From Mobula birostris (lineage: Eukaryota), in the NCBI RefSeq assembly GCF_030028105.1, contig NC_092384.1:3515665-3579664 (forward strand): 64,000 nucleotides of DNA, written 5' to 3'. Below the pieces are notes generated by a model. The model ran no database searches. It was not told the DNA's origin and saw nothing but the letters and a program-made list of their open reading frames with translations. Position numbers and translations under genes: made by a program. This document shows, one piece after another, positions 1-63,260 of the stretch; position 1 is the stretch's first letter; each line of letters starts with the position of its first letter.

Positions 1-280
1 AGGACAAACGTGATCATTGGTGGAAGCGTCACTTTCTACTGTGCTTTCCCACTCCTCCAAGATAACTCAGATCTAAATGTTGTCTGGTGGAAACTAGGGG
101 GAAACAATTTTCTGCAGACTTGGCTGGACAGCAGGAAATATGTCCCTACTTTAAGTAACGGGGAGGCTTCTTTTCAGCTCATAAACGTCAGTGCCGCAGG
201 CACGGGAGTATATTATTTTGGGGTGAAACGTCGAGATCATTCAATAATAAATGGAACTGGGTCAAAACTCGTGGTCCATG
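1..280 (+). CDS. Gene A V-set exon (5' truncated by window edge) with J-like end NGTGSKLVVH
   Basis: Open frame from base 1: GGSVTFYCAFP...VVWWKLGG...ASFQLINVSAAGTGVYYFGV...GTGSKLVVH, phase-1 donor CATG|GTAAG at 281. Gap-free colinear with the gene B V domain. Confidence 0.9.
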
Positions 281-435
281 GTAAGCAGAAATTATTAAAA
301 TTTATACCAAAATAAAGTAAAGAAAGTTCACTTCGAGTTCTCTTATAATAACAACCTAAATTTTATGCAAAAAAAATCTGGTTTCTATTCCCACATAAGT
401 TGTCTGTCTTCTTAGTGTTTCCAGATTTTATTTTT

Positions 436-850: not shown

Positions 851-1897
851 ATTGTTTCACTCTGCTGTGTTTTTGATCTGAGAGTTGGAAGCTGAATTGT
901 AAATTCAAAATTGCTACAAATACAATATAGGGTGCGCTATGGCTTCATTTAGGGACATGACTGAAAATTTTTCGCATTCAAATTTGTTTCTGAATCGAAT
1001 CATGAATATTTTTGTCATTCAAATTTAATCTCACTTTTTTGATACTTAGTCTATGGAATAATGGTGGTGTAATAAGATCATGAAAATGACTTTCACCAAA
1101 CCTTTAACAGAAATTCCAAAGAAACACAGTCAAAAGATGATTCGATGTTCTTGGTTAGTAAGAGAGCAGTGTGACCGACAGTTCGATGCTTGTATTTTGT
1201 TATACCAACTGAAGTAATTAATGCTGAGTAATCTTTTTTTTCGCAACTCACAGTAGATGTTGGATTCAAATGACGACAATTTCGGCTGCATTCAAGTGCT
1301 TCAAAATCTACGACTTTCTTATTTACCGGGCATCGTTTAGATTTTCCTTCTTAATATTATAGTTTTCCTCCTGAAACATATCTGCAGCACCTTAAAAAAT
1401 AACTCCCAATCTCCCAAATACCTTTAGCTGTGTGATGAGAATTGCATTTTTCTAATGGCATCAAATATTGTATCTAAACGGATTCTGCCACGGTCATTTC
1501 CAACATTTACTTCATTACTTAAACCTGCCATTTGGCAATCCAAGCCTTCCTCTTGAAAATGCTACAGCTTCTTTGATGTAACCTTGCAGCATCAGAACCA
1601 CCAACTCTCTTAAGTTTGTGATCCCGCCTATAGGTACCATTATTATCTATGTGAGCATTTCAGGGCATTGAAATTAAAATGAAATAATGTCATTAATTTA
1701 TAATTTTCTCACCACCTATAGAAAACAATGTTTATGTCCTGTGCAGATATTAAACAGACAGTCCAGTAATGTTATTGATGTCACAGTCGATGAAATGTAT
1801 ACAATGTCAATTTGCTTTTACCGAAGAAAGATTTAAATTATTCTGCAATTTTGGATAAAAATATCTGTTATGAATAAATATTTAACTTGTTCTGCAG

Positions 1898-2206
1898 TTC
1901 CACCGACCCCATTACGAATTACTTACAATGAAACCAATCATAATGGATCTATCTCCCTTAAAATTGTATGCAAAACTCCTGAATTCTACCCTGATGAGAT
2001 AAATATTACTTGGTGCAAGGATGGTCTGACCGTCGGGAATGGTATAACTACAATAAAAGCGCTAAAATCAAATGGTCTCCATGAAGTTACCAGCATTCTG
2101 GTCGAGGTACAACCTGTCAAGAGCGGGACTATTTACACTTGTCAGGCAAGTCATCCTACAATCAAAACGGCAAAGGAGTTCCAATTTATGTCAACGACTA
2201 CAGGAG
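1898..2206 (+). CDS. Gene A C1-set exon
   Basis: Acceptor ttgttctgcag|, donor GGAG|GTAAAA. VPPTPLRIT...IVCKTPEFYPDEINITWCKDG...YTCQASHPTI; begins with the same VPPTPL(R/K)IT as gene B. Confidence 0.92.
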
Positions 2207-2700: not shown

Positions 2701-3220
2701 CGCAATCAAAGCTAATTTAGTTACTGGATATGATCTTGGTTAAGATGAATGCCCCGAGGATATCTACCAAAAATCTATTTGTACAGTCATAGGGCAATAT
2801 ACTACCGATGCCCGACGTCTGCTAACCATTCCATGTCGACTACTGAGCTAATTCCGGATTTCTGTTTTTGTTGCCCGCGGTCCCATCCCCTCTGTGTACC
2901 TATTTTACTTGCCTCAGCTATCTACTCTAACAAGTCATTCAATATAGATACCACCCTCCGTGTGAAAAAAAAAGTAATTCAGATTTGTTTTTAAATGTTT
3001 CTCCTATCGTTCTAAAGTGTTGCACCAGAGATTTGGAACTTCTCATCCTGGGGAACAGGTATTTAGTCTGAGGTAATGCCGAATAAAATATCTAACAACT
3101 GTAGACATAATAACAACTTCCGTATATGCACATACCCAAATAAAAGATCAGAAGTGTGACATTATACTTTTCAATCACATTAAAGTTGTTCTACAATAAT
3201 TCGTTACATTTCCTTTGCAG

Positions 3221-3331
3221 AAATTCACCACGCACAATAGTATGTTCAGATTTGTCGGTCGATTGGCGGTGGATTGTTCATTCTATTGCTTGTAATAATC
3301 ATAATACAAAAGCTTGTAAGAAAATACAGAG
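3221..3331 (+). CDS. Gene A transmembrane exon with premature stop: (E)IHHAQ*YVQICRSIGGGLFILLLVIIIIQKLVRKYR
   Basis: Acceptor catttcctttgcag|, donor AGAG|GTGAG, phase 1-1, 111 nt (same length as the gene B TM exon). Hydrophobic run followed by basic residues; TAG at 3238-3240. Confidence 0.85.
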
Positions 3332-4236
3332 GTGAGGAATCATGACATTATAACAAGTTAATTGAAAGCTTTGGTTTTTTTTCAGTGGGCTAAGTGCACT
3401 TCGGGTAAAGTTAGATGAAATTAATGCCAAGGTTGATGCAAGGTTAGCACAGTCCTTGATTACATCCCATATTGCAAGGAAAATATACAGAACATATCAT
3501 TAGATAATTGGCCTGCGTGGTAAAAAAAAAAAAAAAAAAAATGCCGTGCAGTCTCATCACTTCCCTTTTCGCTGCTTTGAACATTTCCTGAATAAATGTA
3601 TTACATCTAGCACTTCGTTAACAGGATATATTTGAACAAGTTTTGACACCATGTGGTTCCGGATATACATTATTTACAGAAATGTGCCGTAAGGAGCCAG
3701 TAACATAATGAGGGATTTCACCCATTCGGCCTATGGATTGTTTGTCCCACTGCCATCGGGAAGAGTCTACGTTGCATCCACGTTAACACCATCATTTTCA
3801 AAAGCAGTTGCTTTCTGCAAATAGTGAGACCGGACCGGCACCTTCATCCACTAATGCACCTCTTCAAACCTCCAACCGTCACAACTTTATTGCAAACTAT
3901 ATTGTATATATTTCTCTAACATTAAATATATCTTTGAAATCTTTGAAACCTTTATGTTTTCCTGTTAGTCACCTTATGTACAGACAGTCCTGTGCCAAGC
4001 GATTTTCTATCGACATACAATCAATCTATCTTATGGACTTATAGTTATTGTGTTGTTATATTATTATAGTGTTCTTTAGCTTATTGCAGTTTTTGTGCTG
4101 CATCGAAGCCACAGTAACAATTGTTCCGTTTTCCATTACACTTGTGTACTGGAAATGACATTAAACGTTCCTGAATCGTGAATCCTAAATTTTGAAACTT
4201 ATAGTCATAAATTCAGCGCCGTGTTATGGCATGTTA

Positions 4237-40631: not shown

Positions 40632-40799
40632 TCAATAGCTATATGTTGCTGTTTTCGTTTCCATATTTCTCGCCTCTTCCTTTATCTTTATTCCAGCATA
40701 CTCGATCTCATGAGTCTTCTGCACTCTTCCTGCGTTTTTCTGAGAAGCGGCGAGATCCACACGTGCATACATAAGTGTATCTTCAGTTCCTTGCATGAT
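40632..40799 (-). CDS. Gene B exon 6, terminal ITIM exon IMQGTEDTLMYARVDLAASQKNAGRVQKTHEIEYAGIKIKEEARNMETKTATYSY*
   Basis: Not in the ORF track. Acceptor tgattgtttccatag|, phase 0. Motifs LMYARV (40775-40758) and IEYAGI (40706-40689) fit the ITIM consensus (I/V/L/S)xYxx(L/V/I). It lies in a non-repetitive island between TEs. Confidence 0.85.
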   Translation of the reverse strand: MMQGTEDTLMYARVDLAASQKNAGRVQKTHEIEYAGIKIKEEARNMETKTATYSY

Positions 40800-43700
40800 C
40801 TATGGAAACAATCATTAGAGATAAGGAGCTTCTGATCCACTATTTTTGAAACCTAATTTAGTCCAAAAGACCAAAAGACAAAGGAGCAGAAGTCGGCCAT
40901 ACGGCCCATCGAGTCTGCTCCGCCATTTTATCATAGCTGACCGATTCTCCCATTGAGTCCCATTCCCCCGCCTTCTCACCATTGATGCCCTGGCTACTCA
41001 CATACCTATCAATCTCTGCCTTAAATACACCCAATGCCTTGGCTTCCACTGTTGCCCAAGGCAACAAATTCCATAGATTCACCACCCTCTGACTAAAAAA
41101 AAAATTCGCATCTCTGTTCTGAATGGGCGCCCTTCAATCCTTAAGTCATGCCCTCTCGTACTAGACTCCCCCATCATGGGAAACATCTTTGCCACATCCA
41201 CTCTGGCCATGCCTTTCAACATTCGAAATGCTTCAATGAGGTCTCCCCTCATCCTTCTAAACTCCAAGGAATACAGTCCAAGAGCGGACAAACATTCCTC
41301 ATATGTTAACCCTCTCATGCCAGGAATCATTCTACTGAATCTTCTCTGTACCCTCTCCAACGTCAGCACATCCTATCTTAAATAAGGAGACCAGAACTGC
41401 CAACAGTGATCCAAGTGAGGTCTCATCACCGCCTTATAGAGCCTCGCATCACATCCCTGCTCCTATACTCTATTCCTCTGGAAATGCATGCCAACATTGC
41501 ATTCGCCTTCTTCACCACTGACTCAACCTGGAGGTTACCCTTAAGGGTATCCTTTACGAGGATGCCCAAGTCCCGTTGCATCTCCGAATGTTCAATTCTT
41601 TCCCCACTTAATTAATAGTGTACCCGTTTTTTTTTTCTGCCAAAGTGCATAACCATACACTTTCCAACACTGTATTTCATTTAGCACGTCTTTGCCCATT
41701 CTTCCAATCTATCCAAGTGTCACTGCAGACTCCCCGTTTCCTCGGCAGTTCCGGCCCCTCCACCTATCTTCGTATCGTCAGCAAACTTAGCCAGAAAACC
41801 ATTTATTCCATAATCCAAATCGTTGATATACAATATAAAAAGAAACGGCCCCAACTCAGACCCCTGTGGAACACCACTGGTAATCGGCAGCCAACCAGAC
41901 CAACCAGAATAGGATCCCTTTATTCCCACTCTCTGTTTCCTGCCAATCAGACAACGCTCTATCCAACGTATGTAAATTTCCCGTAATTCCATGCGCGCTT
42001 TTCTTGTTAAGTAGCCTCATGTGTGGCACCTTGTCAAAGGCCTTCTGAAAATCCAAATATACAACATCTACTGCATCTCCCTTGTCTAGCCTACTGGGAA
42101 TTTCCTCAAAAAAATTGTAATAGGTTTGTCAGGCAGGCTTTTCCTTTAAGGAATCCATGCTGAGTTCTGCCTATCTTGTCATATGCCTCCAGGTACTCTG
42201 TAACCTCATCCTTGACAATCGACTCCAACAACTTCCCAACCACAGATGTCAAGCGAACAGGTCTATAATTTCCATTTTGCTTCCTTACCCGATTCTTGAA
42301 TAGCGGAGTGACATTTGCAGTCTTCCAGTCCTCCGGAACCATGCCGGAATCGATTGACTTTTGATAGATCAACGCTAATACCTCCGCAATCTCCACAGTT
42401 ACTTAAGAACACGAGGGTGTATTCCATCTTGTCTGGAAAATTTATCTAGCTTTGGACTATTCAGCTTCATGAGTACTTTCTCTGTCGTAATTGTGACTGC
42501 GCACACTTTTCTTCCCTGCGACCCTTGAGGGTCCAGTATGGTGCTGATGCATTCCTCAGTGAAGACTGATGCAAAATACTCGTTCAGTTCCTCCGCCATC
42601 TCCTTAACTCCGATTACAATTTCTCCAGCATCATTTTCCATCGGTCTTATATCTACTCTCACCCGTCTTTTGCTCTTTATATACTTGAAAAACCCTTTAG
42701 TATCCTCTTTTGATATTATTTGCTAACTTCCTTTCTTAGTAAATCTTTTCCCTCTTAATGACCTTCTTAGTTTCATAGAAACATAGAAAATAGGTGCAGG
42801 AGTAGGCCATTCGGCCCTTCGACCCTCACCGCCATTTATTATGATCATGGCTGATCATCCAACTCAGAACTCTGCTCCAGCTTTCCCTCCATACCCCCCA
42901 TCCCCGTAGCCACAAGGGCCATATCTAACTCCCTCTTAAATATAGCCAATGAACTGGCCTCAACTGTTTCCTTTGGCAGGTCACCCAGGTCTCCTTGCAC
43001 CTCCCCTTTTCCTAATCGGCCACCATTCAGATAATAATCTGTTTTCCTATTTTTGCCACCAAAGTGGATAACTTCACATTTATCCACATTAAATTGCATC
43101 TGCCATGAATTTGCCCATTCACCCAACCTATCCAAGTCACTCTGCATCCTCTTAGCATCCTCCTCACAGCTAACACTGCCACCCAGCTTCGTGTCATCCG
43201 CAAACTTGGAGATGCTGCATTTAATTCCCTCATCCAAGTCATTAATATATATTGTAAACAACTGGGGTCCCAGCACTGAGCCTTGCGGTACCCCACTAGT
43301 CACCGCCTGCCATTCTGAAAAGGTCCCGTTTATTCCCACTCTTTGCTTCCTGTCTGCTAACCAATTCTCTATCCGCATCAATACCTTACCCCCAATACCG
43401 TGTGCTTTAAGTTTGCACACTAATCTCCTGTGTGGGACCTTGTCAAAAGCCTTTTGAAAATCCAAATATACCACATCCACTGGTTCCCCCCTTCCACTCT
43501 ACTAGTTACATCCTCAAAAAATTCCATGAGATTCGTCAGACATGATTTTCCTTTCACAAATCCATGTTGACTTTGTCCGATGATTTCACCGCTTTCCAAA
43601 TGTGCTGTTATCACATCTTTGATAACTGACTCCAGCAGTTTCCCCACCACCGACGTCAGGCTAACCGATCTATAATTCCCCGGTTTCTCTCTCGCTCCTT

Positions 43701-46700
43701 TTTTAAAAAGTGGGGTTACATTAGCCACCCTCCAATCCTCAGGAACTAGTCCAGAATCTAACGACTTTTGAAAAATTATCACTAATGCATCCACTATTCC
43801 TTGGGCTACTTCCTTAAGCACTCTGGGATGCAGACCATCTGGCCCTGGGGATTTATCTGCCTTTAATCCCTTCAATTTACCTAACAGCACTTCCCTACTA
43901 ACATGTATTTCGCTCAGTTCCTCCATCTCACTGGACCCTCTGTCCCCTACTATTTCTGGAAGATTATTTATGTCCTCCTTAGTGAAGACAGAACCAAAGT
44001 AATTAGTCAATTAGTCTGCCATGTCCTTGCTCCCCATAATCAATTCACCTGTTTCTGTCTGTATGGGACCTACATTTGTCTTTACTAGTCTTTTCCTTTT
44101 TACATATCTATAATAGCTTTTACAGTCAGTTTTTATGTTCCCTGCCAGTTTTCTCTCATAATTTTTTTCCCCTTCCTAATTAAGCCCTTTGTCCTCCTCT
44201 GCTGAACTCTGAATTACTCCCAGTCCTCAGGTGAGCCACTTTTTCTGGCGAATTTGTATGCTTCTTCTTTCCTTTTGTAAGGTTTTAGAAACTTCCCAAT
44301 CCTCTGTCTTCCCACTAACTTTTGCTTCCTTGTATGCCCTCTCCTTTGCTTTAACTTTGGCTTTGACTTCTCTTGTCAACCACGGCTGAATCCTTTTTCC
44401 ATTCGAAAATTTATTCTTTTTTGGAATATACCCGTCTTGTACCTCCCTCACTTCTCGCATAAACTCCAGCCACCGCTGCTCTGCCGTCTTTTCCGCCAGT
44501 CTCCCTTTCCAGTCAACTTTGACCATTTCCTCTCTCATGCCACTGTAATTTCCTTTACACCACTGAAATACCGACACATCAGATTTCGGCTTCTCTTTTT
44601 CAAATTTCACAGTGAATTCAATCATGTTATGATCACTGCCTCCTATGGGTTCCTTCACCTCAATCTCTCTAATCACCCCCGGTTCATTACACAATACCCA
44701 ATCCAGTACCACCGATCCCCTTGTGGGCTCAACAACAAGCTCTTCTAAAAAGCCATCTCGCAGATATTCTACAAATTCTCTCTTGAGATCCAATGGCGAC
44801 CTGATTTTCTGAATCCATTCGCATCTTAAAATGCTCCACAATTATCATAACACCGCCCTTCTGACAAGCCTTGTCTATTTCTTGTTGTAATTTGTAGTCC
44901 ACATGACTGCAGCTGTTTGGAGGCCTATAAATAACTGCCCTCAGGCTCCTTTTACCCCTGCGATTTCTTAGCTCAACACATAAAGATTCTTCACCTTCCG
45001 ATCCTATATCACCTGTTTCTAATGATTTAATTTCATTTTTACCAAAAAAGCCACGCCTCCCCCTCTGCCTACCTTCCTATTCTTCCAATACACCGTGTAT
45101 CCTTGGACGTTCAGCTGCCAGAGACATGCATCCTTTAGCCACGTCTCATTGATGGCCACAGTATCATACTTGCCAATCTGTAGCTGTACAACAAGATCAT
45201 CCACCTTATTCCTTATGCTGCGTGTATTTAAGTATAACAGCTTAAGACCAGTATTTGGTACTTTTCGCTTTGATTTCACTGCAACTTTATTGCATTGTAA
45301 ATCATCCCAATGGTTACAAATTTGCCCCATCACATGCCTGTCTTTCCTGAGATATTTACTGCTCGTTATCTGAGATTTAGTTCTGTTTTCCCCTTCCTCC
45401 ACTCTGTCATTCCGTTTCCCATCCCCCTGCGAAATTAGTGTAAACCCTCCCTAACAACTCTGTTAAACTTACCCGGCAGGATATTGGTCCCCTTCGGGTT
45501 CAGGTGTTACCTGTCCTTTTTGAACAGGTCATACTTCCCCCATAAGAGGTCCCAATTATCCAAGAATCTGAAGCCCTGCCCCCTGCCCCAGTCTCTCAGC
45601 CACGCATTCATCTGCCAGATCCCACTATTCTTGGCCTCGCTAGCACGTGGCACAGTTAGCAATCCCGATATTGCTGGGGCAAGTTTTGAGTAGTCAAGGT
45701 ATTTATAAAGTTTTAAAATTTGCATCACCTGGCCTTTCCAAACGATGATTGTGAACAGGCCATAGCCCTAACAAGCTAATTAAGGTATGAGACTTGGTAA
45801 AAATAATCTAAAAGCTCAAATCTCTTGGGGTGCCCAAATTTTGCATGGTTCTCCTTTCCTTTTTTTCAATCTAAAATTGTACAAAACAAAAATAATACTC
45901 TTAACTTGCTTACAATGTAGAAAAGAATGTTTCATATTTAACTTTAGGACTTTTGGAGATCAGTTCATCTTCTACTCACTTAACTATACGCAGTAACAGA
46001 AATTTTGGCCGGGGTGCTGAAACCTTCGCATACCACTGCACTAGCTACTGTCCTAAACTTTATTTTGTTAGGACGAATGCCCAATTAGAAAATGACGGGC
46101 CTCAGGTAAAATGATTCACGCAGGACCGGTCTGATTAATTAAAATATCAAATGCAGTATCTTGGGGAGCTTAAGGAATTCCTGAATAAGACCAGAAGACC
46201 ATAATACATAGGAGCAGAATTAAGCCATATGGCCCATCGAGTTTGCTCTGCCATTCAACCATGCCTAATACTTTATTTTCTTCTCCTCAACTCCAGTTCC
46301 CGACATCTTCTCGTCATCTTTAATGCTATGTTCAATCAGAGCCTATCTGTCTCTGCCTTAATTACACCCAATGAATTGGCCTACACAGCGATATGTGGCA
46401 TCAAATTCCACAAATTCACAACTTTTTGTTTAAAAAAAAAGTCTCTGCATCTCTGCTTTGAAAGGGCGCCCCTCTTTCCTGAGCCTCTGCTATCTTGTCC
46501 GAGATTCTCCGACCATGGAAAACATCCTTTCCAAAGCTACCCTCTCTAGGTCATTCAACATTCGAAAGGGTTCAATGAGATCCCCCTCAGCCGTTTGAAT
46601 TCCAGCAAGTGCATATGCGGAGCCATCAACCTTTCCTTGTGTGATACAGCTTTCATTCCTGGAATCGTCCTTGTGAAACTCCTCTGAATAAATAAATCGC

Positions 46701-49700
46701 TGAAGATGCTGCACTACATAAGTCAAAGATACAGAACAAAAATGAGCACTGCTTTTCTGGAACATAAGGTGTTATATGCAAAGTGACAGTCATTCTGTTG
46801 CTCTAATTATGTGCTCCTGATAATGGGTGTATGTACAACATATGCTGCGGATATTCTACGAGTCTGTGGTGTCCAGTGCTATCATCTGTTGCTGTTGTGC
46901 GCTGGGGCAGCTGGCTGCGGGTAGCAGACACCAACAGAATCAAGAAACTCATTCGTAAGGCCAGTGATGTTGTGGGGATGGAACTGGACTCTCTCACGGT
47001 GGTGTCTGAAAGCAGGATGCTGTCTAAGTTGCATACCATCTTGGTCAATGTCTCCTATTCACTACATAATGTACTGGATGGGCACAGGAGTACATTCAGC
47101 CAGTGACTCATTCCACCGAGATGCAGCACTGAGCGTCATAGGAAGTCATTCCTGCCTGTGGCCAGCAAAATTTACAACTCCTCCCTTGGAGGGTCAGACA
47201 CCCTGAGCCAATAGGCTGGTCCTGGACTTATTTCTTAATTTACTGGCATAAATTACATATTACTGTTTAACTATTTATGGGTCCATTACTATTTATTATT
47301 TATGGTGCAACTGTAACGAAAACCAATTTCCCCCGGGATCAATAAAGTATGACTATGACTATATATAAACCCCTATATATGTCATAATAATATTAATCTT
47401 ACCTGATTTTCCAGGTAGCGACTTAAGTTCTCATCATTTTCGGCTACAACTGGAGGAAATAAAAAGTGACCAATTTCATCCTCAGCTTGTGAACTGCTGC
47501 ACCGAATGTTATTGAATATTCCAAAAGCAACCAGATCGGTTCGAAATAGGCCAGTGATCTGATGCAATTCTTGTCATTTTATCAAACCACCCAATGATGA
47601 TATTACTGATGATAAAAATTGACCTAGTGTATGCGTAGAATTGTTCAAACTATGTTCTCCTGCGCAACAAACATTCTAAATTTGTAACACTAGTTGCAGA
47701 GTTAACAATATTTTTTTTAGTTGTTACAAAATTCAGTAACATCGAGTAAAATGCGTTTTAAATCTTGTTCTGCACACAACACTCAGCTGTCAGATAGACT
47801 CTCAAGCATATCTACTCAAACCTATATTTTAACATGAATGTTTTATCCTTCTCACTGCCATTTCAACTCCAATATGCTCGTGAAACTAAATATGGGCCAG
47901 GGCAATGTAACGTCTTACCTTCAGTCCTGTCTACTCTGCAGCATCTGATAAGTAACAACAGCGCTAGGATAATGACTCCGCATGCTGCAAGCGCACCCGT
48001 CAGGATCAAGATGAACTGGTATCTGCTTTCTGAGGTGTGCAATAGAAGTCAAATATTAGCATTTTACGGAGATTAAACAATTGAATCACGTGTACTGCGG
48101 ACGTAAAGAATCCGATCCGTACTTTCTCTCGCATCTTGACCACATTGCCTTCGTAGTAAATCGCAAATTGAAATAAAACGTGGATTATGCGTAGGGCATT
48201 AATAAGTAATTATATCAATATTTAATCCAGCTTATTTTCATCAGTAATTCTGTATTCTTGAGGAAGTTGATAAGGCATGGATTGAAGCGAGGGCTGGCAA
48301 ACATACACAAGCGAACTCAGGTCAAAGAATATGATGATGCAAAACGGAATTTCTAGGTCGAGTTGTGAATTGTGCCGGCAAAATTTAGCAGATACGAACT
48401 CTGATATAATAGGCAGGCAGGCTAATATAAGGTGTAGCAGCTTGGTGTGCAGAATTAGGGATATCAATATGTTGTTTTAAACCAGATGAAGGGAAAAGCA
48501 GCTTACATTTATTTATAGTATCATGTCAGGGCAGGTTGCGAAGATGCTAGTAAGGCTTATGCCATTCGTCGGCACAAATGTGGAATCTGAAAGAAGTGAA
48601 GTCATGCCGCATTTTTATTGAACTATGGTCTGGGATATTGTGATATTGTGTTCAATTAGAGTAAGATTGTGACGCGTTAGAGAGGATCCACGAAAGTCTA
48701 TTTCTGTTAGAGATGCTGTCGAAACTGCATGCATTCTTCACTTTGCTCAGTCGTGGAGAAGATAACTGAAGACTCACACACACCGATTATGAAACATTCT
48801 GTTTCTTTACGGGAACATTTTTGTACTACTGATTTATATATGTAACTTATAGTAGGTCGATGACTGCATTGTACTGCTGTCAAACAACAACAAATTTCAG
48901 GTCATGCAATTCAGTGATCAGAAAATTCGGTGAATCTGATCGTGCAAAGTGGAGATCAGATAAAATTACATAAGAGGGCAAGTCTGCATTGCTGATAACA
49001 AGGATTTAGAAAGACAGGATCTGCAAAAGTCAAGGAGTTACGCCATTTATTTTTGCATATTATTCCTTGAAGCAGGAAACAGCAGCAGTATAATATGATA
49101 TCTAACTCTTCTTTGTATAGCCAATGCCTTACATTTCGCTTTCCCCCTTTGAATATGCTCGCTTCATCACTGTTTGTGAGGAATTGATAAATACCAGACA
49201 TAAAACATGTGGTTAAGAATATAAGCCTCTTACCCAATATGATTCTATATGACTCGGAAGCTGGCTCCTTCATAGATTCATGGAACACCTGGCAAGTATA
49301 AACATACCCACTTTCTGTTACATTGAGGGAGCTTGAAACGAGATATAATCCCTCCTCGTTCTGCATTCGTGTGGTATGCATTCCTGAAGTGATTTTGATT
49401 TCATTTTTATACCATATGAGCTCATAGTCCTTCGGGAAAAAAGCAGCAGTTGTGCACGTCAGAGTCACGGAAGGAGCGTTTACTTCGGTGATTTTCAACG
49501 GAGTCGGCGGAACTGCAAATGATTAAAAAAAAGAAGAGAGCTAGAATCTCTAAGCGCGCATTTATCAGAGAAAATAATCGCCGACAGAAAAGTACTCTTC
49601 ACAACCGGGAACGTTAATCTGAATTTAATTTGAAAACATTAATCCCAAATCAAGCAGGTTAAACATTTCTGCATGACGTTTTATGCAGCGATATACATTT

Positions 49701-52700: not shown

Positions 52701-55700
52701 ATCTCGGTCCTAAAAGGCTTTTCCTTTATCCTTAAACTGTGACCCGTCGTTCTGGACTTCCCCAATAGCGGAAACAATCTTCTTGCATCTAGCCTGTCCA
52801 ATCACTTTATGATTTTGTACGTTTCAATAAGAACCCCCTTCAATCTTCTAAATTCCAGCGAGTATAAGCCTAGTCGATCCAGTCTTTCATCATATGAAAG
52901 TCCTGCCATACCAGGAATCAATCTGGTGAACGTTCTTTGTACTCCTTCTATGGCAAGAATGTCTTTCCTCAGATTAGGGGACCAAAACTGCACACAGTAC
53001 ATAGAACATATAACGTAGAATAGTACAGCACAGTACAGGCCCTTCGACCCACAATGTTGTGCCGACACTCAAACCCTGCCTCCCATATAAGCCCCCACCT
53101 TAGATTCCTCCATATACCTGTCTAGTAGTCTCCCAAACTTCACCAATGTAACTGCCTCCACCACTGACTCAGGCAGTCCATTCCACGAACCAACCACTCT
53201 CTGAGTAAAACACCTTCCTGTAATATCCCCCTTGAGCTTCCCACCCCTTACCTTAAAGACATGTCCTCTTGTATAGAGCAGCGGTGCCCTGGGGAAGAGG
53301 CGCTGGCTGTCCACTCTATCTATTCCTCTTATTATCTTGGACACCTCTATCATGTCTCCTCTCATCCTCCTTCTCTCCAAAGAGTAAAGCCCTAGCTCCC
53401 TTAATCTCTGATCATAATGCATACTTTCTAAACCAGGCAGCATCCTGGTAAATCTCCTCTGTACCCTTTCCAATGCTTCCATATCCTTCCCATAGTGAGG
53501 TGACCAGAACTGGACACAATACTCCAAGCGTGGCCTGACCAGAGTTTTATGGAGCTGCATCATTACATCGCGGCTCTTAAACTCTATCCCTCGACTTATG
53601 AAAGTTAACACCCAATAAGCTTTCTTAACTACCCTATCCACCTGTGAGGTAACTTTCAGGGACCTGTGGAAATGTACCCCGAGATCCCTCTGCTCCTCCA
53701 CACTACCAAGTATCCTGCCATTTACTTTGTACTCTGCCTTGGAGTTTGTCCTTCCAAAGTGTACCACCTCACACTTCTCCGGGTTGAACTCCATCTGCCA
53801 TTTCTCAGCCCACTTCTGCATCCTATCACTGTCTCTCTGCAATCTTTGACAATCCTCTACACTATCTACAACACCACCAACCTTTGTGTCGTCTGCAATC
53901 TTGCCAACCCATCCTTCTACCACCACATCCAAGTCGCCAATAAAAATCACGAAAAGTAGAGGTCCCAGAACAGATCCTTGTGGGACACCACTAGTCACAA
54001 TCCTTCAATCTGAATGTGCTCCCTCCACCACCATCCTCTGCCTTCTGCAAGCAAGACAATTCTGAATCCACCTGATCGAACTTCCCTGGATCCCATGCCT
54101 TCTAAATTTCTGAATAAGCCTACCGTGTGGAACCTTGTCAAATGCCTTACTAAAATCCATATAGATCACATCCACTGCACTACCCTCATCTATATGCCTG
54201 GTCACCTCCTCAAAGAACTCTATCAGGCTTGTTAGACATGATCTGCCCTTCACAAAGCCATGCTGACTGTCCCTGATCAGACCATGAGTCACTAAATGCC
54301 TATAGATCCTATCTCTGAGAATCTTTTCCAACAGCTTTCCCACCACAGACGTAAGGCTCACTGGCCTATAATTGCCCAGACTATCTCTACTACCTTTTTT
54401 GAACAACATTCGCCTCCCTCCAATCCTCCGGTAACATTCCTGTGGACAACGCGGACGTAAAGATCCTTCCCAGAGGCTCAGCAATCTCTTCTCTCGCCTC
54501 GTGGAGCAGCCTGGGAAATATTACGTCAGGCCCCGGGGACTTATCTGTCCTAATGTATTTTAACAACTCCAACTCCTCCTCTCCCTTAATATCAGCATGC
54601 TCCAGAACATCAACCTCACTCATATTGTCCTCACCGTCATCAAGTTCCCTCTCATTGGTGAATAGCGAAGAGAAGTATTGATTGAGGACCTCGCTCACTT
54701 ACACAGCCTCCAGGTACATCTTCCCACCTTTATCTCTAATCGGTCGTACCTTAAGTCCTTTCATCCTTTTTTTCTTGACGTAATTGAAGAATGCCTTGGA
54801 GTTTTCCTTTACCCTCCTCGCCAAGGCCTTCTCATGCACACTTCTTGCTCTCCTCAGCCCCTTTTTAAGCTTCTTTCTTGTTTCCCTATATTCATCAATA
54901 GACCCAGCTGATTCTTGCTTCCTAAACCTCAAGTATGCTGCCTTCTTCCTCCTGACTAGATTTTCCACCTCACTTGTCACCCATGGTTCCTTCACCCTAC
55001 CATTCTTTATCTTTCTCACCGGGACAAATTTATCCCTTACATCCCGCAAGAGATCTCTAAACATCGACCACGTGTCCATAGTGCATTTCCCTGCAAAAAC
55101 ATCATCCCAATTCACACCCGCAAGTTGTAGCTTTATAGCCTCATAATTTGCCTTTCCCCAATTAAAAATGTTCCTGTCCTCTTTGATTCTATCCTTTTCC
55201 ATGATAATTATAAAGGCCAGGGATTGGTGTTCACTGTCCCGCAGATGGTCACCCACTGAGAGATCTGTGACCTGACCCGGTTCATGAACTAGTACTAGAT
55301 CTAGCATGGCATTCCCCCTGGTCGGCCTGTCCACATACTGTGACAGGAATCCATCCTGGACACACTTAACAAATTCTGTGCCATCTAAACCCTTGGAACT
55401 AATCAGGTGCCAATCAATATTAGGGAAGTTAAAGTCACCCATGGTAACAACCCTGTTATTTATGCACCTTTCCAAAATCTGCCTCCCAATCTACTCATCT
55501 GTATCTCTGCTGCTACCAGGGGGCCTATAGAATACCCCTAGTAGAGTAACTGCGCCCTTCCTGTTCCTGACTTCCACCCATATTGACTCAGAAGAAGATC
55601 CGCTACATTATCCATCCTTTCTGTAGCTGTAATAGTATCCCTGACAAGTAATGCGACCCCTCCTCCCGTTTTTCTGCCCTCTCTATCCCTTTTAAAGCAC

Positions 55701-58700: not shown

Positions 58701-60857
58701 AGGTCTTCAGAAACAGCAGGAGGAGGGATCATAAATCAATCCTCAAATTGGGAGAGAGAAGGCAATTTCAAGTTCCTGGGTGTCAATATCTCTGGGGAAC
58801 GAACCTGGCCCTAACAAATCGACGTTGCTATAATGTGGGCAAGTTAGTGGCTATATTTTTTTGGAAGTTTGAGGAGATTTGGTTTGTCACCTAAGACCCT
58901 CGGAAACGTCTAGGGATGTACCAGAAGAGCATTTTGACAGGTTGCATCACCGTCTGGCATGCTGGGGAGCGACTACTGTACCAGATCGAAAGAAGCTACA
59001 GTAAGTTATAAATGAGTTAGTTCTATCATGGGTGCTAGCATCCATAGTATCCAAGACATCTTCAAGGAGCAGTGTCTCTGGAGGACTGCCTTCATCATTA
59101 AGGACTTCCATTACCCAAGACATGTCCTCTTCTCATTATAACCCTAAGGAAGGAGGTGTGAAAGCGTGAAGACACACACTCAGCGATTCAAAGAAATCTT
59201 TCTTCCTCTCTGCTATCCGATCTCTCATGGATAATGAACCTATAAACACTACCTTACTGACATCAGCACTGGACTCCAAGGCCGGATTGTTCTGAGTTCA
59301 AACTCAGCCGGGTCCCAGCCTGGACAGCAGCAGTGTCTGCAGAGAACAAATGCCCGGCCATCTACTTTCATATCTGCCATGAATACCCTGTATACCCTTT
59401 GGTCCACGATGTCACGAAGAGTCGGACTCGACTTAAGGACTTAACAACTGAACAACAACTTTAAATGATTTTGCTGATTTTCTCTTTTTCCTATATTATT
59501 AGGTTGTATTTGCTTTATATTGTACTGCTGCCGGTACGTTAATAAATTTCACGACGTATCCCGTCGATGATTTTAGTCCTGATTCTGATTCTGATTATAA
59601 GTTAATTCTGTTTAGAAGTTCTCCATTCGCTAAATAGACATAACAAACATTTATTTATTTTTTTTTTCCATTTGCAAAGTGACAGACAGACTCGAGTTTA
59701 CAAATGAACTATTCTCGGGCTTTCCTAATGATGCCAGAGTATGCAACCGAGACATCGGTTGCAATTGATATTTGTACCCGGCTGGAAACCCGAGAAGCGG
59801 TTATTTGTTATATATGCTGACAAAACATTAGAACTTTTTCCAGAATCGTTTTGATATTCTGCAGGTAATCGCTGAATTCTTAACTTACGAAGGCCACGAC
59901 ATCATCTGTAACTCACAGGTCTACAATCGGATGAAATAATTTCAGTTAACACATGTAATATTCTATTTCAGTAATTGCCTAGCTACGGACTTAAAATCCT
60001 TCATTAGATATACATCCCAGAATTAAATTTCCAGATAAAAAAGGAGCATAATTTTTTTTTGAAATTAGAAAGCAATGTTCTTTCGGAGATTACACTGTTC
60101 CACCAACAGTAAACGGTGGTTATTCAAACCCGAAAGGAAGAATACTATTGTGGATAGTGTGGCAGTCCCTTGTTCTACTTTATCAATATATAACGCGCTC
60201 CGTTAAATGTAGTCGTTGCATTTGTCTAAGACACGCCGAGTGAGACTTACCGTGTACAATAACGTTCGTGCCACTGCCTTGGGAAAATTTTCTTGTCCAG
60301 TCTCTCACACTGCAATAATAGATTCCAGAGTCACCGAAGCTCACCCCGAGGATATGGAGTTCGGCAGAACCTTGCTCTGAAGTTATAATACTCATCCTTC
60401 TCTCTGCAGTGGCATCTATAAATTGTTTTTGTCCCCCTTTCCTCCAATAAGCATCCACCAGTGAGTTATGAGCGAAGATTGGGTAGGTGCAGTAAATTGA
60501 CACATTTTCACCCTCTGCCTTCGTCACCTGCTCAGGAATCTGGTTCACTGTGAACGAGGCCCTGCCAGCAACTGTCAGAATGAAAAACATTCGTTATCAG
60601 AGCATAATGATCGGCATTATTGACCAGAAAAAAAAACATATACTGTTACTGTAAACGAAAAAAGGTCAATTTCCTTGTGATTGAAGTAAATCAATTGTAA
60701 ATATCTAAACTGCGATTTACTAATCGAGCAAAAAGTACCTCATGAAGATATTCCCTGCCCCCACTCCGTTATTCAGCATTAACGAGAGAAGCGTATACAT
60801 ACCAGTGTAAGTAATCTGCAGGACTAAGATATACTGCAGCAAAGTAAATATTTGCAT
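40632..60857 (-). CDS. Gene B: complete 6-exon VJ-C1-TM-2xITIM inhibitory Ig-superfamily receptor (SIRP/NITR-like), 326 aa; join(60857..60803, 60571..60251, 49512..49234, 48029..47919, 47449..47403, 40799..40632)
   Basis: Manual splicing. All five introns are GT-AG with compatible phases (1,1,1,1,0). Exon lengths 55+321+279+111+47+168 = 981 nt = 326 codons plus TGA, with no internal stop. Domain order is leader, V, C1, TM, cytoplasmic tail with two ITIMs. Confidence 0.88.
40858..42775 (-). mobile_element. CR1 LINE RT and 3' end (gene B intron 5)
   Basis: NYRPVRLTSVVGK, DFQKAFDKVPH, GVPQGSELGP, KFADDTK, YSLEFRRMRGDL. Confidence 0.92.
42777..45660 (-). mobile_element. Young composite CR1 LINE (ORF1 esterase end, EN, RT with internal deletion, 3' tail)
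   Basis: Long open ORFs 42845-43480, 43420-44010 and 44227-44841; RT jumps from GEVQGDLG directly to LPKETVEASS; tail catagaaacatagaaa. Confidence 0.92.
45665..45860. mobile_element. Possible Tc1/mariner remnant
   Basis: ggggtgcccaaattttgca resembles Tc1 terminal repeats as I recall them; no partner TIR found. Confidence 0.3.
46830..47362 (+). mobile_element. Rex1-like LINE 3' end with (TATGAC)n tail
   Basis: ADTNRIKKLIRKASDVVG...STFSQ; aataaagtatgactatgactat. Confidence 0.82.
47403..47449 (-). CDS. Gene B exon 5, short cytoplasmic exon (V)VAENDENLSRYLENQ
   Basis: Strong polypyrimidine acceptor ctttttatttcctccag| and donor CAG|GTAAG. It is 47 nt and gives exactly the phase 1 to 0 change needed to join the TM exon to the ITIM exon. 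Confidence 0.8.
47919..48029 (-). CDS. Gene B exon 4, transmembrane exon (E)SRYQFILILTGALAACGVIILALLLLIRCCRVDRTE
   Basis: Not in the ORF track. Acceptor cttctattgcacacctcag|, donor GAAG|GTAAGA, phase 1-1, 111 nt. About 23 hydrophobic residues with no charge, followed by RCCR. Confidence 0.9.
49234..49512 (-). CDS. Gene B exon 3, Ig C1-set domain
   Basis: Acceptor tttttttaatcatttgcag|, donor TTGG|GTAAG. VPPTPLKIT...VTLTCTTAAFFPKDYELIWYKN...GLYLVSSSLNV...YTCQVFHESM carries the C1 hallmarks C-x4-F-x-P, W, and YTCxVxH. Confidence 0.95.
52444..56082 (-). mobile_element. Nested CR1-in-CR1: host copy at 52444-53000 and 55822-56082, inserted copy at about 53001-55820
   Basis: Host reading frame breaks at YCVQFW (52998) and resumes at 55822. 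The insert carries EN, RT and its own 3' tail, including a 309-aa ORF at 53069-53998. Confidence 0.88.
58330..59598 (+). mobile_element. Old Rex1-like LINE RT and 3' end with (ATTCTG)n tail
   Basis: TGASLECALSPLIYSLY, KFGNDTTIVG; cctgattctgattctgatt tail. Confidence 0.75.
59258..59459 (+). mobile_element. tRNA-derived SINE with RTE-type 3' tail
   Basis: B-box-like gagttcaaactc at about 59297; tail gtcacgaagagtcggactcgactt...gaacaacaac. Confidence 0.6.
60251..60571 (-). CDS. Gene B exon 2, Ig V-set domain with J-like G strand
   Basis: Acceptor ttttcattctgacag|, donor CACG|GTAAGT. Sequence FTVNQIPEQVTKAEGENVSIYC...YWRK...LHILGVSFGDSGIYYCSVRDWTRKFSQGSGTNVIVH has the canonical Cys, Trp, DxGxYxC and GxGT motifs. 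Confidence 0.95.
60803..60857 (-). CDS. Gene B exon 1, signal peptide MQIFTLLQYILVLQITYT
   Basis: ATG at 60857, hydrophobic 18-aa stretch, phase-1 donor ACTG|GTATGT, 231 nt upstream of the V exon acceptor. Confidence 0.8.
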
Positions 60858-61160: not shown

Positions 61161-61423
61161 GTGTCTATTTGAAAAACCAAAAACCCATGCAGTCACAGCA
61201 TTAGAGTGAAAAGGAACAGGCAGAACAATTGAACCTAATACTTCTGCCTTCGTAGGAGCTCGCAGAAGCTTTAGATAAATAGTGTCGCATAAAGGATAAG
61301 TGCAAATGATAGAGGAAAAGGAAACTCTATCAAAAACTAAGAGGAAATAATGAGCCGAAAACTGATGAATCCAGACAGCTAATTGTCAAAATCCGGGCTT
61401 CCAAACGGATGTGGGGTGTGGGG

Positions 61424-61430
61424 GAGAGAA

Positions 61431-61508
<78 letters not shown>
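61424..61508 (+). repeat. (GA)n microsatellite about 570 nt upstream of gene B ATG
   Basis: About 40 GA units read directly. Confidence 0.98.
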
Positions 61509-61515
<7 letters not shown>

Positions 61516-63260
61516 AGGGATGAAGATAGTATACAAATTAATTTTTTATTATTTGTAGTTATCTGTTAGGCGGTGCAGACAGGGTTGTGCTAGGCGGTAT
61601 GGTGGGGTATAACATCCTTTGGTCTCCCCGAAGAGTTCAGTCAGTTTATAGCTTGGAGGTTTGTAAAAATAACATACGATTAGCGAATAATGTGAAGTAT
61701 TTATTAGGAGTTGCTTAATGCTTAGAATTCAAAAACTTAAAATACAGAGGCATGTTGGTAGGCGATGAGCAATGGATTGGGAACTGTGCCTTTGTTGAAC
61801 CGGAACCCAGGTATCTTTGTGCACACATCTCCAAAACCACAATTAAAGTAAACGACTGCATATCTTGGGATTTTGCGGGGCTTTGGTATGAGCGCAATGT
61901 TAAAAAATGCCGGAATTTCCATCGGTCCTTGATCTGTATACCTGAGGTAAAATGAGCGTAGTGAATATTCTCCAAACTGTTTTGTCGGGTCGTACATGTA
62001 GACATTGGCGAGGTATGCGAAGATTAAAGATTGCACAAGAGTCATTTAAGTATGGAATCATACAGCACCATGAAGAATCATACAGTATCATTCAGTTCGA
62101 CTCTTCCATGGCGACGGAGAGGCCTCACTTCGCTTGCGATTCACCCTCCAGGCCCTAAGATTTTCTCTGCTATCTTCCGCTTCCTGGGACGGCAAGATGA
62201 TATTCTCCAAGGTTAAGTAATAGTTATTGACATACTTAAGCGCAATACCGCACGAAACAGTGATAACTGAAATTTGGACTTTTCTGTAAAGACTAAATAG
62301 TGAAGTAAAATAGTTTTTTTTTGTAGCGGAGCTCAATGCACTATAATCTTGCTAAACTGAAGATACTCCAAGATGCTTATATCAGATACAGCACAATGAC
62401 TAAATTAACTTTTAAACTCGCAATCCGTGCGCTTAAGATGGCGCGCGATGTAGTCATGTTTATTGTAAAGCAGTAGTCCGACTGCTCAGGCACACGTCTG
62501 TTACTACAGACTGTCGATATTATGATTCCAGTAGTTGTCCAAGTAAATACAGGTCGATGTTATGGATGTGCTAACGAGGTGGAGGCGACATTTAAAAAGT
62601 GAGGAGGACCGTGCGGAAGTTTCTAGCAGGCTTGCGATATTGGGAGCATTCGCTTTTTTACTGCAGAGTGATGAAAGGTGTGAAGGGACAGAGGGACCTT
62701 GCGTTATACGTCCATATGCACCTGAGTGTTGCAGTGAATGTTGATTGGGTTGTTAGGAAGACGTATGGTGCGTTGCATTGTTCATTTTCATTAGTCAGGG
62801 GATAGAGCTTAAGAACTGCGAGATAATATTACAGTTCTTTATAATTCTGGTTAAATCACACTTAAAGTATTGTGTTCTCTTCTGATCATTTCATAATAAG
62901 AAGTACATGGAAACTCTCCAGTGGTTACAGGGGATATTGACCAGAATGTTACCTGAATTGAAGTACTGGTTCAGACGCTAGCCACACTGACTGTCTCAGC
63001 TTTGGTTTGCAAAATAAAGTTTGAAATTTCCTGAAAATTTTTCGGCGACTCCTTGTCATTTGTGAAATCACGACAGGGGCTAGTAGAAAGAAGACGTGAG
63101 GATGGAAAATGGATGGAGTGGAAAGTACCAGAGAGACATTTTGTAATGACCAATGAATGAAATGTTTGGAATCAACTGAGCTTGCCTGCTGTCTCAGGGC
63201 TGGGTGTGATTGCTCCGCACCACAGCCACCCCCTGTTCACCTTCACTGTACCTGCCCCAT

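What the first reader, a model, noticed from the sequence alone, without database searches (positions are those of the whole stretch)
60251..60571. Compact V domain resembling IgNAR V (short C'-C''/CDR2 region)
Seen: the conserved Trp to second-Cys distance is 44 residues in both genes (Phe occupies the Cys position in gene A). Established: conventional Ig, TCR and SIRP V domains have roughly 50-60 residues here, while shark IgNAR V domains are shorter because they lack C''/CDR2. Gene B's N-terminus VNQIPEQVTKAEGENVSIYC resembles the VNAR framework VDQTP..VTKETGESLTINC, and gene A's SRKYVPTLSNGEASFQL resembles VNAR GRYVETVNSGSKSFSL (both compared from memory). Inference: an innate receptor that shares ancestry or convergent architecture with VNAR.
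Basis: partly seen in the sequence, partly recalled or inferred. Interest (0 to 1): 0.75.

Follow-up and report, generated by a model that had tools for sequence, protein, structure and literature searches.

The report
Compact V domain of ray receptor
This exon encodes the tip of a manta-ray immune "brake" receptor. The tip is an antibody-type variable domain that lacks one loop-and-strand segment, so it is shaped like the shark single-domain antibody VNAR, but I found no evidence that the two are specially related.

Summary
Window 60571-60251 (minus strand) is a clean phase-1/phase-1 exon for a ready-joined V-J immunoglobulin domain. Its conserved Trp lies 44 residues before the second Cys. 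Gene A has the same spacing, with Phe in place of that Cys.

- **Spacing across the family:** it is 44 in 36 of 49 homologues from chimaeras, sharks and rays, and it is never longer.
- **Predicted fold:** AlphaFold models of both gene types (pLDDT 89.8 and 88.7) show no C'' strand and only a one-residue C' bridge.
- **Sequence kinship with VNAR:** not family-wide. Gene A's type and a shark orthologue of gene B show no VNAR among their listed PDB hits. The E-F-G half matches NKp30 at E about 6e-6.
- **What the gene is:** gene B is an intact inhibitory receptor (leader, VJ, C1, membrane span, two ITIMs). It belongs to a large cartilaginous-fish family of paired ITIM and Arg-TM receptors that carries only automatic database names.
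- **Gene A:** a decayed copy of the activating type.

The VNAR likeness is therefore shared compact architecture, not shown ancestry. I did not run a V-domain tree that includes VNAR. This scan noted the same family before on other DNA of this genome.

The parts
60803..60857 (-). Gene B leader exon (MQIFTLLQYILVLQITYT + 1 nt), donor G|GTATGT
   Evidence: Read. tblastn of P0003 and P0171 gives 83-89% identity. The spliced reading frame is open.
60251..60571 (-). Gene B VJ exon, the finding itself. It encodes a compact V domain with a fused J-like motif (QGSGTNVIV), no RSS at its 3' end, and one N-glycan sequon (NVS) on strand B.
   Evidence: Translation. Pfam V-set, E 2.4e-11. Splice sites. AF2 model m4c0c2570a949. 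The only RSS-like heptamer (60546) lies inside framework 1, not at a V-J junction.
49234..49512 (-). Gene B C1-set constant-domain exon (phase 1/1)
   Evidence: Pfam C1-set, E 9.5e-14. 78-86% identical to the Mobula paralogues. Best PDB sequence hits are Ig heavy-chain C domains and UrIg2.
47919..48029 (-). Gene B stalk and transmembrane exon (ESRYQFILILTGALAACGVIILALLLLIRCCRVDRTE). The hydrophobic core carries no charged residue.
   Evidence: tblastn gives 81-89% identity to P0003, P0004 and P0183. Splice sites.
47403..47449 (-). Gene B first cytoplasmic exon (VAENDENLSRYLENQ)
   Evidence: 14 of 14 residues identical to P0004. Splice sites.
40644..40799 (-). Gene B last cytoplasmic exon, with two ITIMs (LMYARV, IEYAGI) and the stop codon
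   Evidence: tblastn gives 78-84% identity to the paralogue tails. Motif scan of the conceptual 326-aa product.
1..289 (+). Gene A VJ exon, cut by the window start. It has the same 44-residue spacing, but the second Cys is replaced by Phe (TTT, 217-219).
   Evidence: 82% identical to P0056, which keeps the Cys.
1897..2205 (+). Gene A C1-set exon
   Evidence: Pfam C1-set, E 7.6e-10. 88% identical to P0056.
3217..3342 (+). Gene A transmembrane exon of the activating type, with Arg in the membrane-proximal part (QICRSIGGG). An in-frame TAG at 3238-3240 interrupts it.
   Evidence: tblastn against P0056 gives 81% identity, with the stop where P0056 has Trp. Sequence read.

Best explanation
The exon is the ligand-binding tip of an ordinary but undescribed kind of immune receptor gene of a manta or devil ray.

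**Gene B (minus strand, 60857 to 40644)** encodes a signal peptide, one germline-joined VJ-type V domain, one C1-set domain, an uncharged membrane span and a tail with two ITIMs. By analogy with other ITIM receptors, the V domain would bind a cell-surface ligand that has not been identified. The phosphorylated ITIMs would then recruit SHP-type phosphatases and damp the cell. This step is inferred.

**The family.** It is a large multigene family restricted to cartilaginous fish. Inhibitory members like gene B are paired with short-tailed members that carry an Arg in the membrane span, the usual mark of pairing with an ITAM adaptor. Gene A in this window is of that activating type. It looks dead, having lost the canonical Cys and gained a stop in the TM exon.

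**The V domain.** It is a compact 'I-type' V. The C-to-D connection is only 14 residues, C' is vestigial and C'' is absent. That leaves the BC loop (10 residues), the short FG loop (5 residues) and the C-D belt as possible contact surfaces.

**Relation to VNAR.** VNAR, NCAM-type I-set domains, CD79b and NKp30 share this compaction. That shared shape explains why VNAR tops the structural lists. The likeness to VNAR is in architecture, either convergent or an old shared state. It is not evidence of a special VNAR relationship.

**Shown:** exon structure, domain types, spacing and its conservation, predicted topology, motif content. **Inferred:** signalling, ligand binding, monomeric use of the V domain.
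For: - **Gene model:**. The conceptual product is 326 aa and open, with ITIMs LMYARV and IEYAGI.
- **Domain calls:** V-set E 2.4e-11 and C1-set E 9.5e-14.
- **Family:** 214 representative proteins at E <= 0.001 in 1.84 billion. Every member of the family whose source was looked up is from a chimaera, shark or ray: Callorhinchus, Scyliorhinus, Heterodontus, Heptranchias, Cetorhinus, Mustelus, Chiloscyllium, Hemiscyllium, Rhincodon, Pristis, Hemitrygon, Hypanus, Narcine and Mobula.
- **Paired forms:** ITIM-tailed P0003, P0004, P0009, P0019 and P0024, against Arg-TM P0001, P0021, P0028 and P0017.
- **Compact V:**
- **Sequence neighbours differ by member and by half of the domain:**
- **Published background:** VNAR has 8 strands instead of 10 through a framework2-CDR2 deletion and was proposed to derive from a cell-surface receptor (PMC4622739). 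NKp30 has a type I Ig-like topology of eight strands (PMC12272517).
Against: - For gene B itself, VNARs hold the first six places by Z, show the highest structure-based identity (up to 34%), and are the nearest ESM feature clusters. A real, faint kinship therefore cannot be excluded.
- No phylogeny including VNAR, NAR-TCR V, NKp30, SIRP and TCR V was run.
- The strand assignment rests on predictions, not on a solved structure.
- One cytoplasmic exon present in the paralogues was not found in gene B, so its tail may be altered.
- Expression of this particular copy was not shown.
- The key paper on shark NCR3-family genes (Kinlein et al. 2021) could not be read. The family may already be described there.
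Confidence: 0.72

Rival explanations
1. The family is a true relative of the NAR variable domain. On this reading, a non-rearranging cell-surface VJ receptor of this compact kind is the lineage from which VNAR and NAR-TCR V arose, so the missing C''/CDR2 is inherited and not convergent.
For: - VNARs are the top six structural matches for gene B, aligning end to end at 24-34% identity.
- The nearest ESM feature clusters are 'putative Antigen receptor (Fragment)' at 0.96 and 0.94.
- By my recollection of VNAR sequences the C-to-D connection is the same length. That is a lead, not a test.
- Both families occur in elasmobranchs; this one is also found in chimaeras.
- A cell-surface-receptor origin of VNAR has been proposed in print (PMC4622739, citing Streltsov 2004).
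Against: - The Z margin over V-light, TCR V-alpha and NCAM Ig1 is under 1 unit.
- The gene-A type shows only 17-23% identity to VNARs, with V-light ranking first and PD-1 tying with VNAR.
- The gene-A-type V and a shark gene-B orthologue give no VNAR sequence hits.
- The E-F-G half prefers NKp30 and TCR-gamma.
- The N-terminal framework prefers TCR V-alpha and pIgR.
- Further shortening to 41 and 39 residues happened inside the family, so loss in this region recurs easily.
Confidence: 0.1
2. It is simply a member of the cartilaginous-fish NCR3 (NKp30) gene family already published for nurse shark. Its I-type V would then be the same eight-strand fold known from human NKp30, and nothing here would be new.
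For: - The E-F-G profile hits four NKp30 chains at E 5.5-7.2e-6 without gaps. These are among the best single-domain matches, though a TCR-gamma chain scores higher (32 against 29 bits).
- P0008 hits NKp30 at E 8e-4.
- NCR3 gives TM 0.78-0.81 in Swiss-Prot models, and an 'NCR3-like' Atlas cluster gives TM 0.88.
- RefSeq names a V-only isoform of one member 'NCR3-like'.
- C1-skipping isoforms exist, giving V-TM proteins of NKp30 layout (P0003, P0008, P0010).
- Arg-TM members exist.
- The nurse-shark NCR3 family comprises eight accession numbers (PMC12227049); that the eight subtypes are 'highly divergent' is my recollection of the unread 2021 paper's abstract.
Against: - Most members carry a C1 domain, which mammalian NKp30 lacks.
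- Gene B is inhibitory, not activating.
- Full-length V similarity to human NKp30 is weak (21-23% identity), and NKp30 is not in gene B's top 60 sequence hits.
- No curated NCR3 or nurse-shark entry appeared among the family hits.
- Another agent of this scan judged a sister gene 'not a true NKp30 gene' (s1-145351; I did not test that independently).
- I could not read the 2021 paper.
Confidence: 0.3
3. It is the cartilaginous-fish orthologue of SIRP (signal-regulatory protein), as RefSeq's automatic names suggest.
For: - Many members are named 'tyrosine-protein phosphatase non-receptor type substrate 1-like'.
- The layout is shared: a V with a J motif, C1-set domain(s), and paired ITIM and charged-TM forms.
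- A turtle SIRP cluster appears at rank 14 in AFDB clusters.
Against: - There is one C1 domain, not two.
- The V domain lacks the C'/C'' segment.
- No SIRP chain appears in any of the top-60 PDB sequence lists or the top-50 structural lists.
- RefSeq gives the same family five other unrelated names, including tapasin-related, CD276, NCR3LG1, Ig lambda and TCR beta. The names reflect architecture only.
Confidence: 0.04
4. The 'missing C''' is a modelling artefact, and the real domain keeps short C' and C'' strands like a small conventional V domain.
For: Both structures are predictions from an alignment of 49 sequences without templates. DSSP does show one bridge residue at position 50.
Against: - Only 14 residues join strand C to strand D, too few for two strands plus three turns.
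- pLDDT there is 92-94.
- Two independent models agree.
- Family profiles align without gaps to I-set domains of Robo, titin and contactin across this region.
Confidence: 0.05

Closest known systems
Shark IgNAR variable domain (VNAR)
   Different: - VNAR is assembled by RAG from V, D and J segments. This exon is germline-joined and ends in a splice donor.
- VNAR sits on five C domains of a secreted or membrane heavy-chain dimer. This V sits on one C1, a membrane span and an ITIM tail.
- The FG loop here is 5 residues, with no extra cysteines. VNAR has a long CDR3 that is often disulfide-tethered.
- The sequence likeness is not seen in other family members.
NKp30 (NCR3), including the shark NCR3 gene family
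   Same: Both have a non-rearranging VJ exon and an eight-strand I-type fold (PMC12272517). The E-F-G region, including the GxG(T/S)xLxV J motif, matches without gaps at E about 6e-6. An NCR3-like Atlas cluster gives TM 0.88. Some family members have an Arg in the membrane span, and some isoforms are V-only.
   Different: - The usual form here has a C1-set domain.
- Gene B is ITIM-bearing, hence inhibitory.
- Overall identity to human NKp30 is 21-23%.
- By my recollection of the human sequence, its Trp-to-Cys spacing is about 53. I did not check that here.
- MHC linkage and B7H6 binding are unknown.
SIRP family (SIRP-alpha/beta/gamma)
   Same: Both have a V domain with a J-like motif followed by C1-set domain(s). 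Both form a paired family with ITIM tails or charged membrane spans. RefSeq's most frequent automatic name for the family is SIRP-like.
   Different: - There is one C1 domain instead of two.
- The V domain is compact, without C''.
- No SIRP chain appears among the listed sequence or structure matches.
I-set domains of adhesion molecules (NCAM Ig1, Robo, titin) and CD79b
   Different: The I-set adhesion domains lack the J-like GxG motif, and none of these relatives has the V-C1 receptor layout or the paired ITIM and Arg-TM signalling of this family.
UrIg / UrIg2 (non-rearranging shark antigen-receptor-like genes)
   Same: Both have a germline-joined VJ exon followed by C1-type domains and are confined to cartilaginous fish. 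The C1 of gene B hits the UrIg2 chain at E 2.5e-15.
   Different: UrIg2 has nine C domains and forms disulfide-linked dimers (PMC12227049). Its V is most like VH and is not among the top structural matches here. It has no ITIM and Arg-TM pairing.

Membership tests
IgNAR V (VNAR) | V domain lacking C'' and CDR2 (8 strands instead of 10) | tested here: met
   AF2 models show a 14-residue C-D connection. VIA alignment onto VNAR is end to end. This rests on predictions, not on a solved structure.
IgNAR V (VNAR) | Assembled somatically from RSS-flanked V, D and J segments | tested here: not met
   V and the J motif are one exon ending in G|GTAAGT. There is no heptamer at the junction.
IgNAR V (VNAR) | Carried on the IgNAR heavy chain with multiple C domains (or on TCR-delta as NAR-TCR) | tested here: not met
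   One C1 exon is followed by TM and ITIM exons.
IgNAR V (VNAR) | Sequence or phylogenetic grouping with VNAR to the exclusion of other V families | tested here: inconclusive
   Gene B scores 28 bits with VNAR against 31 with TCR V-alpha. Other members show no VNAR hit. No tree was run.
NKp30 / NCR3 | Single non-rearranging VJ-type Ig domain of I-type fold | tested here: met
   NCR3 models give TM 0.78-0.88. The E-F-G match is E 6e-6.
NKp30 / NCR3 | Ectodomain is the V domain alone (no C domain) | tested here: not met
   A C1 exon lies at 49512-49234. V-only isoforms are annotated for paralogues, but the gene carries a C1.
NKp30 / NCR3 | Arg in the membrane span and a short tail (activating, adaptor-coupled) | tested here: not met
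   Gene B has an uncharged span and two ITIMs. Gene A and other members are of the Arg type.
NKp30 / NCR3 | MHC linkage and B7H6 as ligand | not testable with these tools
   The window holds no marker genes. The look-up of the paralogue's contig gave no neighbours.
SIRP | V-C1-C1 ectodomain with a conventional ten-strand V | tested here: not met
   One C1 and a compact V. No SIRP chain appears in the hit lists.
SIRP | Paired ITIM-tailed and charged-TM members | tested here: met
Paired ITIM / charged-TM IgSF receptor families (general kind) | Clustered paralogues with similar ectodomains and opposite signalling modules | tested here: met
   Gene A (Arg-TM type) and gene B (ITIM type) lie tail to tail in one window. 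Both types occur across species.

The most novel reading that the evidence does not exclude
This cartilaginous-fish VJ-C1 receptor family preserves the compact, non-rearranging cell-surface V domain from which the NAR variable domain (VNAR and NAR-TCR V) was derived. If so, the absence of CDR2 in VNAR is an inherited state. That would give the long-proposed 'cell-surface receptor' ancestor of VNAR a living representative.
Probability: 0.08. Interest if true: 0.85.

Novelty: new variant of a known kind. Interest (0 to 1): 0.42.

Why it matters
Intact single-exon VJ genes are actively sought as relics of the gene that the RAG transposon split to create antibodies and T-cell receptors (PMC12227049). 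The VNAR domain has been proposed to descend from a cell-surface receptor (PMC4622739).

This work shows that a large family, known only from automatic annotation and present in sharks, rays and chimaeras, carries a germline VJ domain of VNAR-like size and shape on a C1 domain. The VNAR comparison can now be tested with real sequences from the same animals.

My evidence favours the modest reading. The compaction is the I-type state also seen in NKp30, CD79b and adhesion molecules, and it has recurred inside the family. The value lies mainly in documenting the family's V architecture and its paired inhibitory and activating design. It does not lie in a new origin story for VNAR.

These stable, small, non-rearranging V domains might also interest people who engineer single-domain binders.

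Tried and rejected
- **V-sized profile search of the 5.8-billion-protein set:** returned three family fragments and no outgroups.
- **Full-length profile search:** returned only family members plus two unrelated multi-Ig proteins. I had hoped for named nurse-shark NCR3 entries, TCR, Ig-light and SIRP chains, and none appeared.
- **Whole-domain profile against PDB:** swamped by multi-domain I-set proteins, whose scores add up. It could not rank single V domains, so I split the domain into halves instead.
- **Papers not held:** Kinlein et al. 2021 (PMC8273117), Flajnik et al. 2012 (PMC3709836), Ohta and Flajnik 2015 (PMC4594805) and Streltsov et al. 2004 (PMC515081).
- **Full-text searches with no result:** family accession numbers and 'NS344823' found nothing.
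- **SIRP orthology:** rejected on domain count, V topology and absence from all hit lists.
- **UrIg identity:** rejected, because UrIg proteins have many C domains and a VH-like V.
- **Genomic neighbours of the paralogue P0170:** no DNA and no neighbouring genes were returned.
- **Missing cytoplasmic exon of gene B:** a low-stringency search found nothing convincing.
Full report
**What is at the coordinates**

On the minus strand, 60571 to 60251 is a 321-nt exon bounded by a ...ctgacag acceptor and a G|GTAAGT donor. It is phase 1 at both ends, which is the classic layout of an immunoglobulin-superfamily domain exon.

It encodes 106 full codons, running from AGRASFTVNQIPEQ... to ...SGTNVIVH. 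It carries the canonical Cys27, Trp42 and Cys86, the DSGIYYC motif, and a J-like G-x-G-T-x-V-x-V motif fused in the same exon. There is no recombination signal at the junction. The one heptamer nearby (60546) lies inside framework 1. Pfam calls it V-set at E 2.4e-11.

**The observation**

Trp to second Cys is 44 residues in gene B. In gene A it is 44 counted from the family-aligned Trp. Gene A has Phe (TTT, 217-219) at the Cys position.

Across 49 aligned homologues the spacing is 44 in 36, 43 in 2, 41 in 8 and 39 in 3, and never more. The stretch between strands C and D is 14 residues in 41 of them and 12 in the other 8.

Conventional V domains are longer in this interval. In HMMER's own alignments, TCR V-alpha 10 needs 7 extra residues there. 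pIgR D1 carries about 11 more residues over its aligned stretch, inserted in the same interval.

**The gene and its family**

Homologues let me place the other exons of gene B:

| Exon | Window coordinates (minus strand) | Note |
|---|---|---|
| Leader | 60857-60803 | |
| VJ | 60571-60251 | the finding |
| C1-set | 49512-49234 | Pfam E 9.5e-14 |
| Stalk and membrane span | 48029-47919 | uncharged core |
| Cytoplasmic 1 | 47449-47403 | |
| Cytoplasmic, last | 40799-40644 | ITIMs LMYARV and IEYAGI |

Spliced conceptually, these give an open 326-residue protein. One 36-codon cytoplasmic exon that the Mobula paralogues carry was not found. The interval is full of retrotransposon ORFs, but the flanking phases allow direct splicing.

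Gene A (plus strand) has a VJ exon at 1-289, a C1 exon at 1897-2205 and a TM exon at 3217-3342. It is the short-tailed type with Arg near or in the span. Besides the Cys-to-Phe change it has an in-frame TAG at 3238-3240, so it is probably a pseudogene.

An exhaustive HMMER scan of 1.84 billion representative proteins found 214 hits at E <= 0.001. Every member of the family whose source I looked up comes from a chimaera, shark or ray. The closest are Mobula birostris and M. hypostoma models, 85-90% identical in V, so gene B is a further paralogue of an annotated cluster.

The family splits into two kinds of member. ITIM/ITSM-tailed members include P0003, P0004, P0009, P0019 and P0024. Members with an Arg in the span and almost no tail include P0001, P0021, P0028 and P0017. 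Some annotated isoforms skip C1.

RefSeq's automatic names are inconsistent: SIRP-like, tapasin-related-like, NCR3LG1-like, CD276 homolog, Ig lambda-like, TCR beta-like, H-2 class I-like, and NCR3-like for one V-only isoform. I found no curated name and no paper that cites the accessions.

**Fold**

AlphaFold2 with the 49-sequence alignment gives a confident model of gene B's V domain, with mean pLDDT 89.8 and values of 92-94 across residues 41-60. The strands are A, A', B, C (39-44), one bridge residue at 50, D (59-64), E, F and a bulged G. There is no C'' strand and essentially no C'.

A model of the gene-A-type domain (P0056, which keeps the Cys) has pLDDT 88.7 and the same layout. Family profiles also align without gaps to I-set domains of Robo, titin and contactin across this region.

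**How VNAR-like is it?**

Structurally it is VNAR-like, but not uniquely so.

- **Foldseek against PDB.** VNARs lead at E 4e-9 and TM up to 0.80. CD79b, V-lambda, NKp30 (rank 22, TM 0.77), NCAM Ig1 and TCR V-alpha follow within a tenfold E range.
- **ESM Atlas.** The nearest feature clusters are 'putative Antigen receptor (Fragment)', at 0.96 and 0.94.
- **Other libraries.** Reviewed AlphaFold models rank CD79b and NCR3 first, with TM 0.76-0.81. The Atlas shape search gives the family itself at TM 0.89, then an 'NCR3-like' cluster at TM 0.88 with rmsd 1.8 over 104 residues.

At the sequence level the VNAR signal belongs to gene B alone and is weak.

| Query | Best PDB sequence hits | VNAR |
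|---|---|---|
| Gene B V | TCR V-alpha 10 (31 bits), V-light (27) | 28 bits |
| Gene-A-type V (P0056) | V-kappa, pIgR | none in top 60 |
| Window's own gene A V | nothing significant | E 0.4 |
| Shark gene-B orthologue (P0008) | I-set proteins, CD79b (E 1e-4), NKp30 (E 8e-4) | none at E <= 0.01 |
| B-type E-F-G half profile | TCR-gamma (32 bits), four NKp30 chains (29 bits, E 5.5-7.2e-6, ungapped) | none in top 60 |
| B-type N-terminal half profile | TCR V-alpha (0.0014), pIgR D1 (0.005) | 0.03-0.3 |

**Interpretation**

Published work states that VNAR has 8 strands instead of 10 because of a framework2-CDR2 deletion, and that it resembles adhesion-molecule domains. This led to the proposal of a cell-surface-receptor origin (PMC4622739). 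NKp30 has a type I Ig topology of eight strands (PMC12272517).

The ray domain belongs to the same structural class, a VJ domain in the compact I-type state. Three observations argue that the compaction is either an old shared state of non-rearranging VJ receptors or easily repeated:

- The family is at least as old as the chimaera-elasmobranch split.
- It shortened further at least twice, to 41 and 39 residues.
- Its different halves point to different relatives.

None of this marks a special bond with VNAR. I put the specific-ancestry reading at about 0.1.

**Mechanism**

The exon structure, domains and motifs are shown. The rest is inferred. Gene B would sit in the membrane with a single compact V domain held out on a C1 spacer. 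It would bind an unidentified ligand through its BC and FG loops and the C-D belt, and signal inhibition through its two ITIMs. Arg-TM paralogues would couple to ITAM adaptors and give the opposite signal, as in SIRP, KIR and other paired families.

Other notes of this scan report expanded B7H6-like genes in this genome, and published work links NKp30 and B7H6 copy numbers. B7H6-like proteins are therefore reasonable first candidates for the ligand. That is speculation.

**Classification and novelty**

It fails defining tests for VNAR: no rearrangement, no IgNAR constant region and no long CDR3. It fails them for SIRP: one C1 and a compact V. As a whole gene it fails them for mammalian-type NKp30: it has a C1 and is inhibitory. 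Even so, its V domain is closest in kind to NKp30 and CD79b.

It may overlap the 'shark NCR3 family' of Kinlein et al. 2021, which I could not read. I give that 0.3. I file it as a new variant of a known kind, namely non-rearranging VJ-type paired receptors.

Earlier notes of this scan (s1-145351, s1-145097) reached the same view of the family on other DNA of this genome. My analysis of the V fold and the VNAR question is independent of them.

**What was left out**

No tool supplied VNAR, NKp30, SIRP or TCR reference sequences as usable ids, and typing long sequences is barred.

Noticed in passing
window 1-3342 (+): Gene A looks like a pseudogene of the activating (Arg-TM) type. The canonical second Cys is Phe (TTT, 217-219), and the TM exon has an in-frame TAG at 3238-3240 where the close homologue P0056 has Trp.
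   Followed up: partly
window 40800-47402 (-): Gene B lacks a detectable copy of the 36-codon cytoplasmic exon (with an SPSYADL motif) that the Mobula and Hemitrygon paralogues carry. The interval holds non-LTR retrotransposon ORFs. The exon phases still allow an open 326-aa product.
   Followed up: partly
window 32774-32842 (-): A short ORF start, MHLFKRLLNCPIVFASITVADRA, weakly matches (E 0.04-0.3) the leader plus first V codons of family members, without the leader intron. It could be a relic of a processed copy or a chance match.
   Followed up: no
window 14906-15961 (+), 42845-44841 (-), 53069-55475 (-): Long ORFs with endonuclease and reverse-transcriptase-like sequence, typical of LINE-type retrotransposons, fill the introns and the intergenic space. 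The 11-kb V-to-C1 intron of gene B contains one.
   Followed up: no
window 61380-61530; 20183-20349: A long (GA)n microsatellite lies just upstream of gene B's leader, and there is a 167-base run of N. Neither was examined further.
   Followed up: no
proteins P0060 / P0186 (Pristis pectinata): RefSeq names the V-only isoform of one family gene 'NCR3-like' and the V-C1 isoform of the same gene 'SIRP-like'. The automatic names follow architecture, not ancestry.
   Followed up: partly
proteins P0005, P0007, P0013, P0015: Multi-V-domain proteins with 4-6 tandem VJ-like domains and Trp-to-Cys spacings of 46-50 are among the best hits. Several cartilaginous-fish VJ families therefore seem to have shortened C'-C'' regions.
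   Followed up: no
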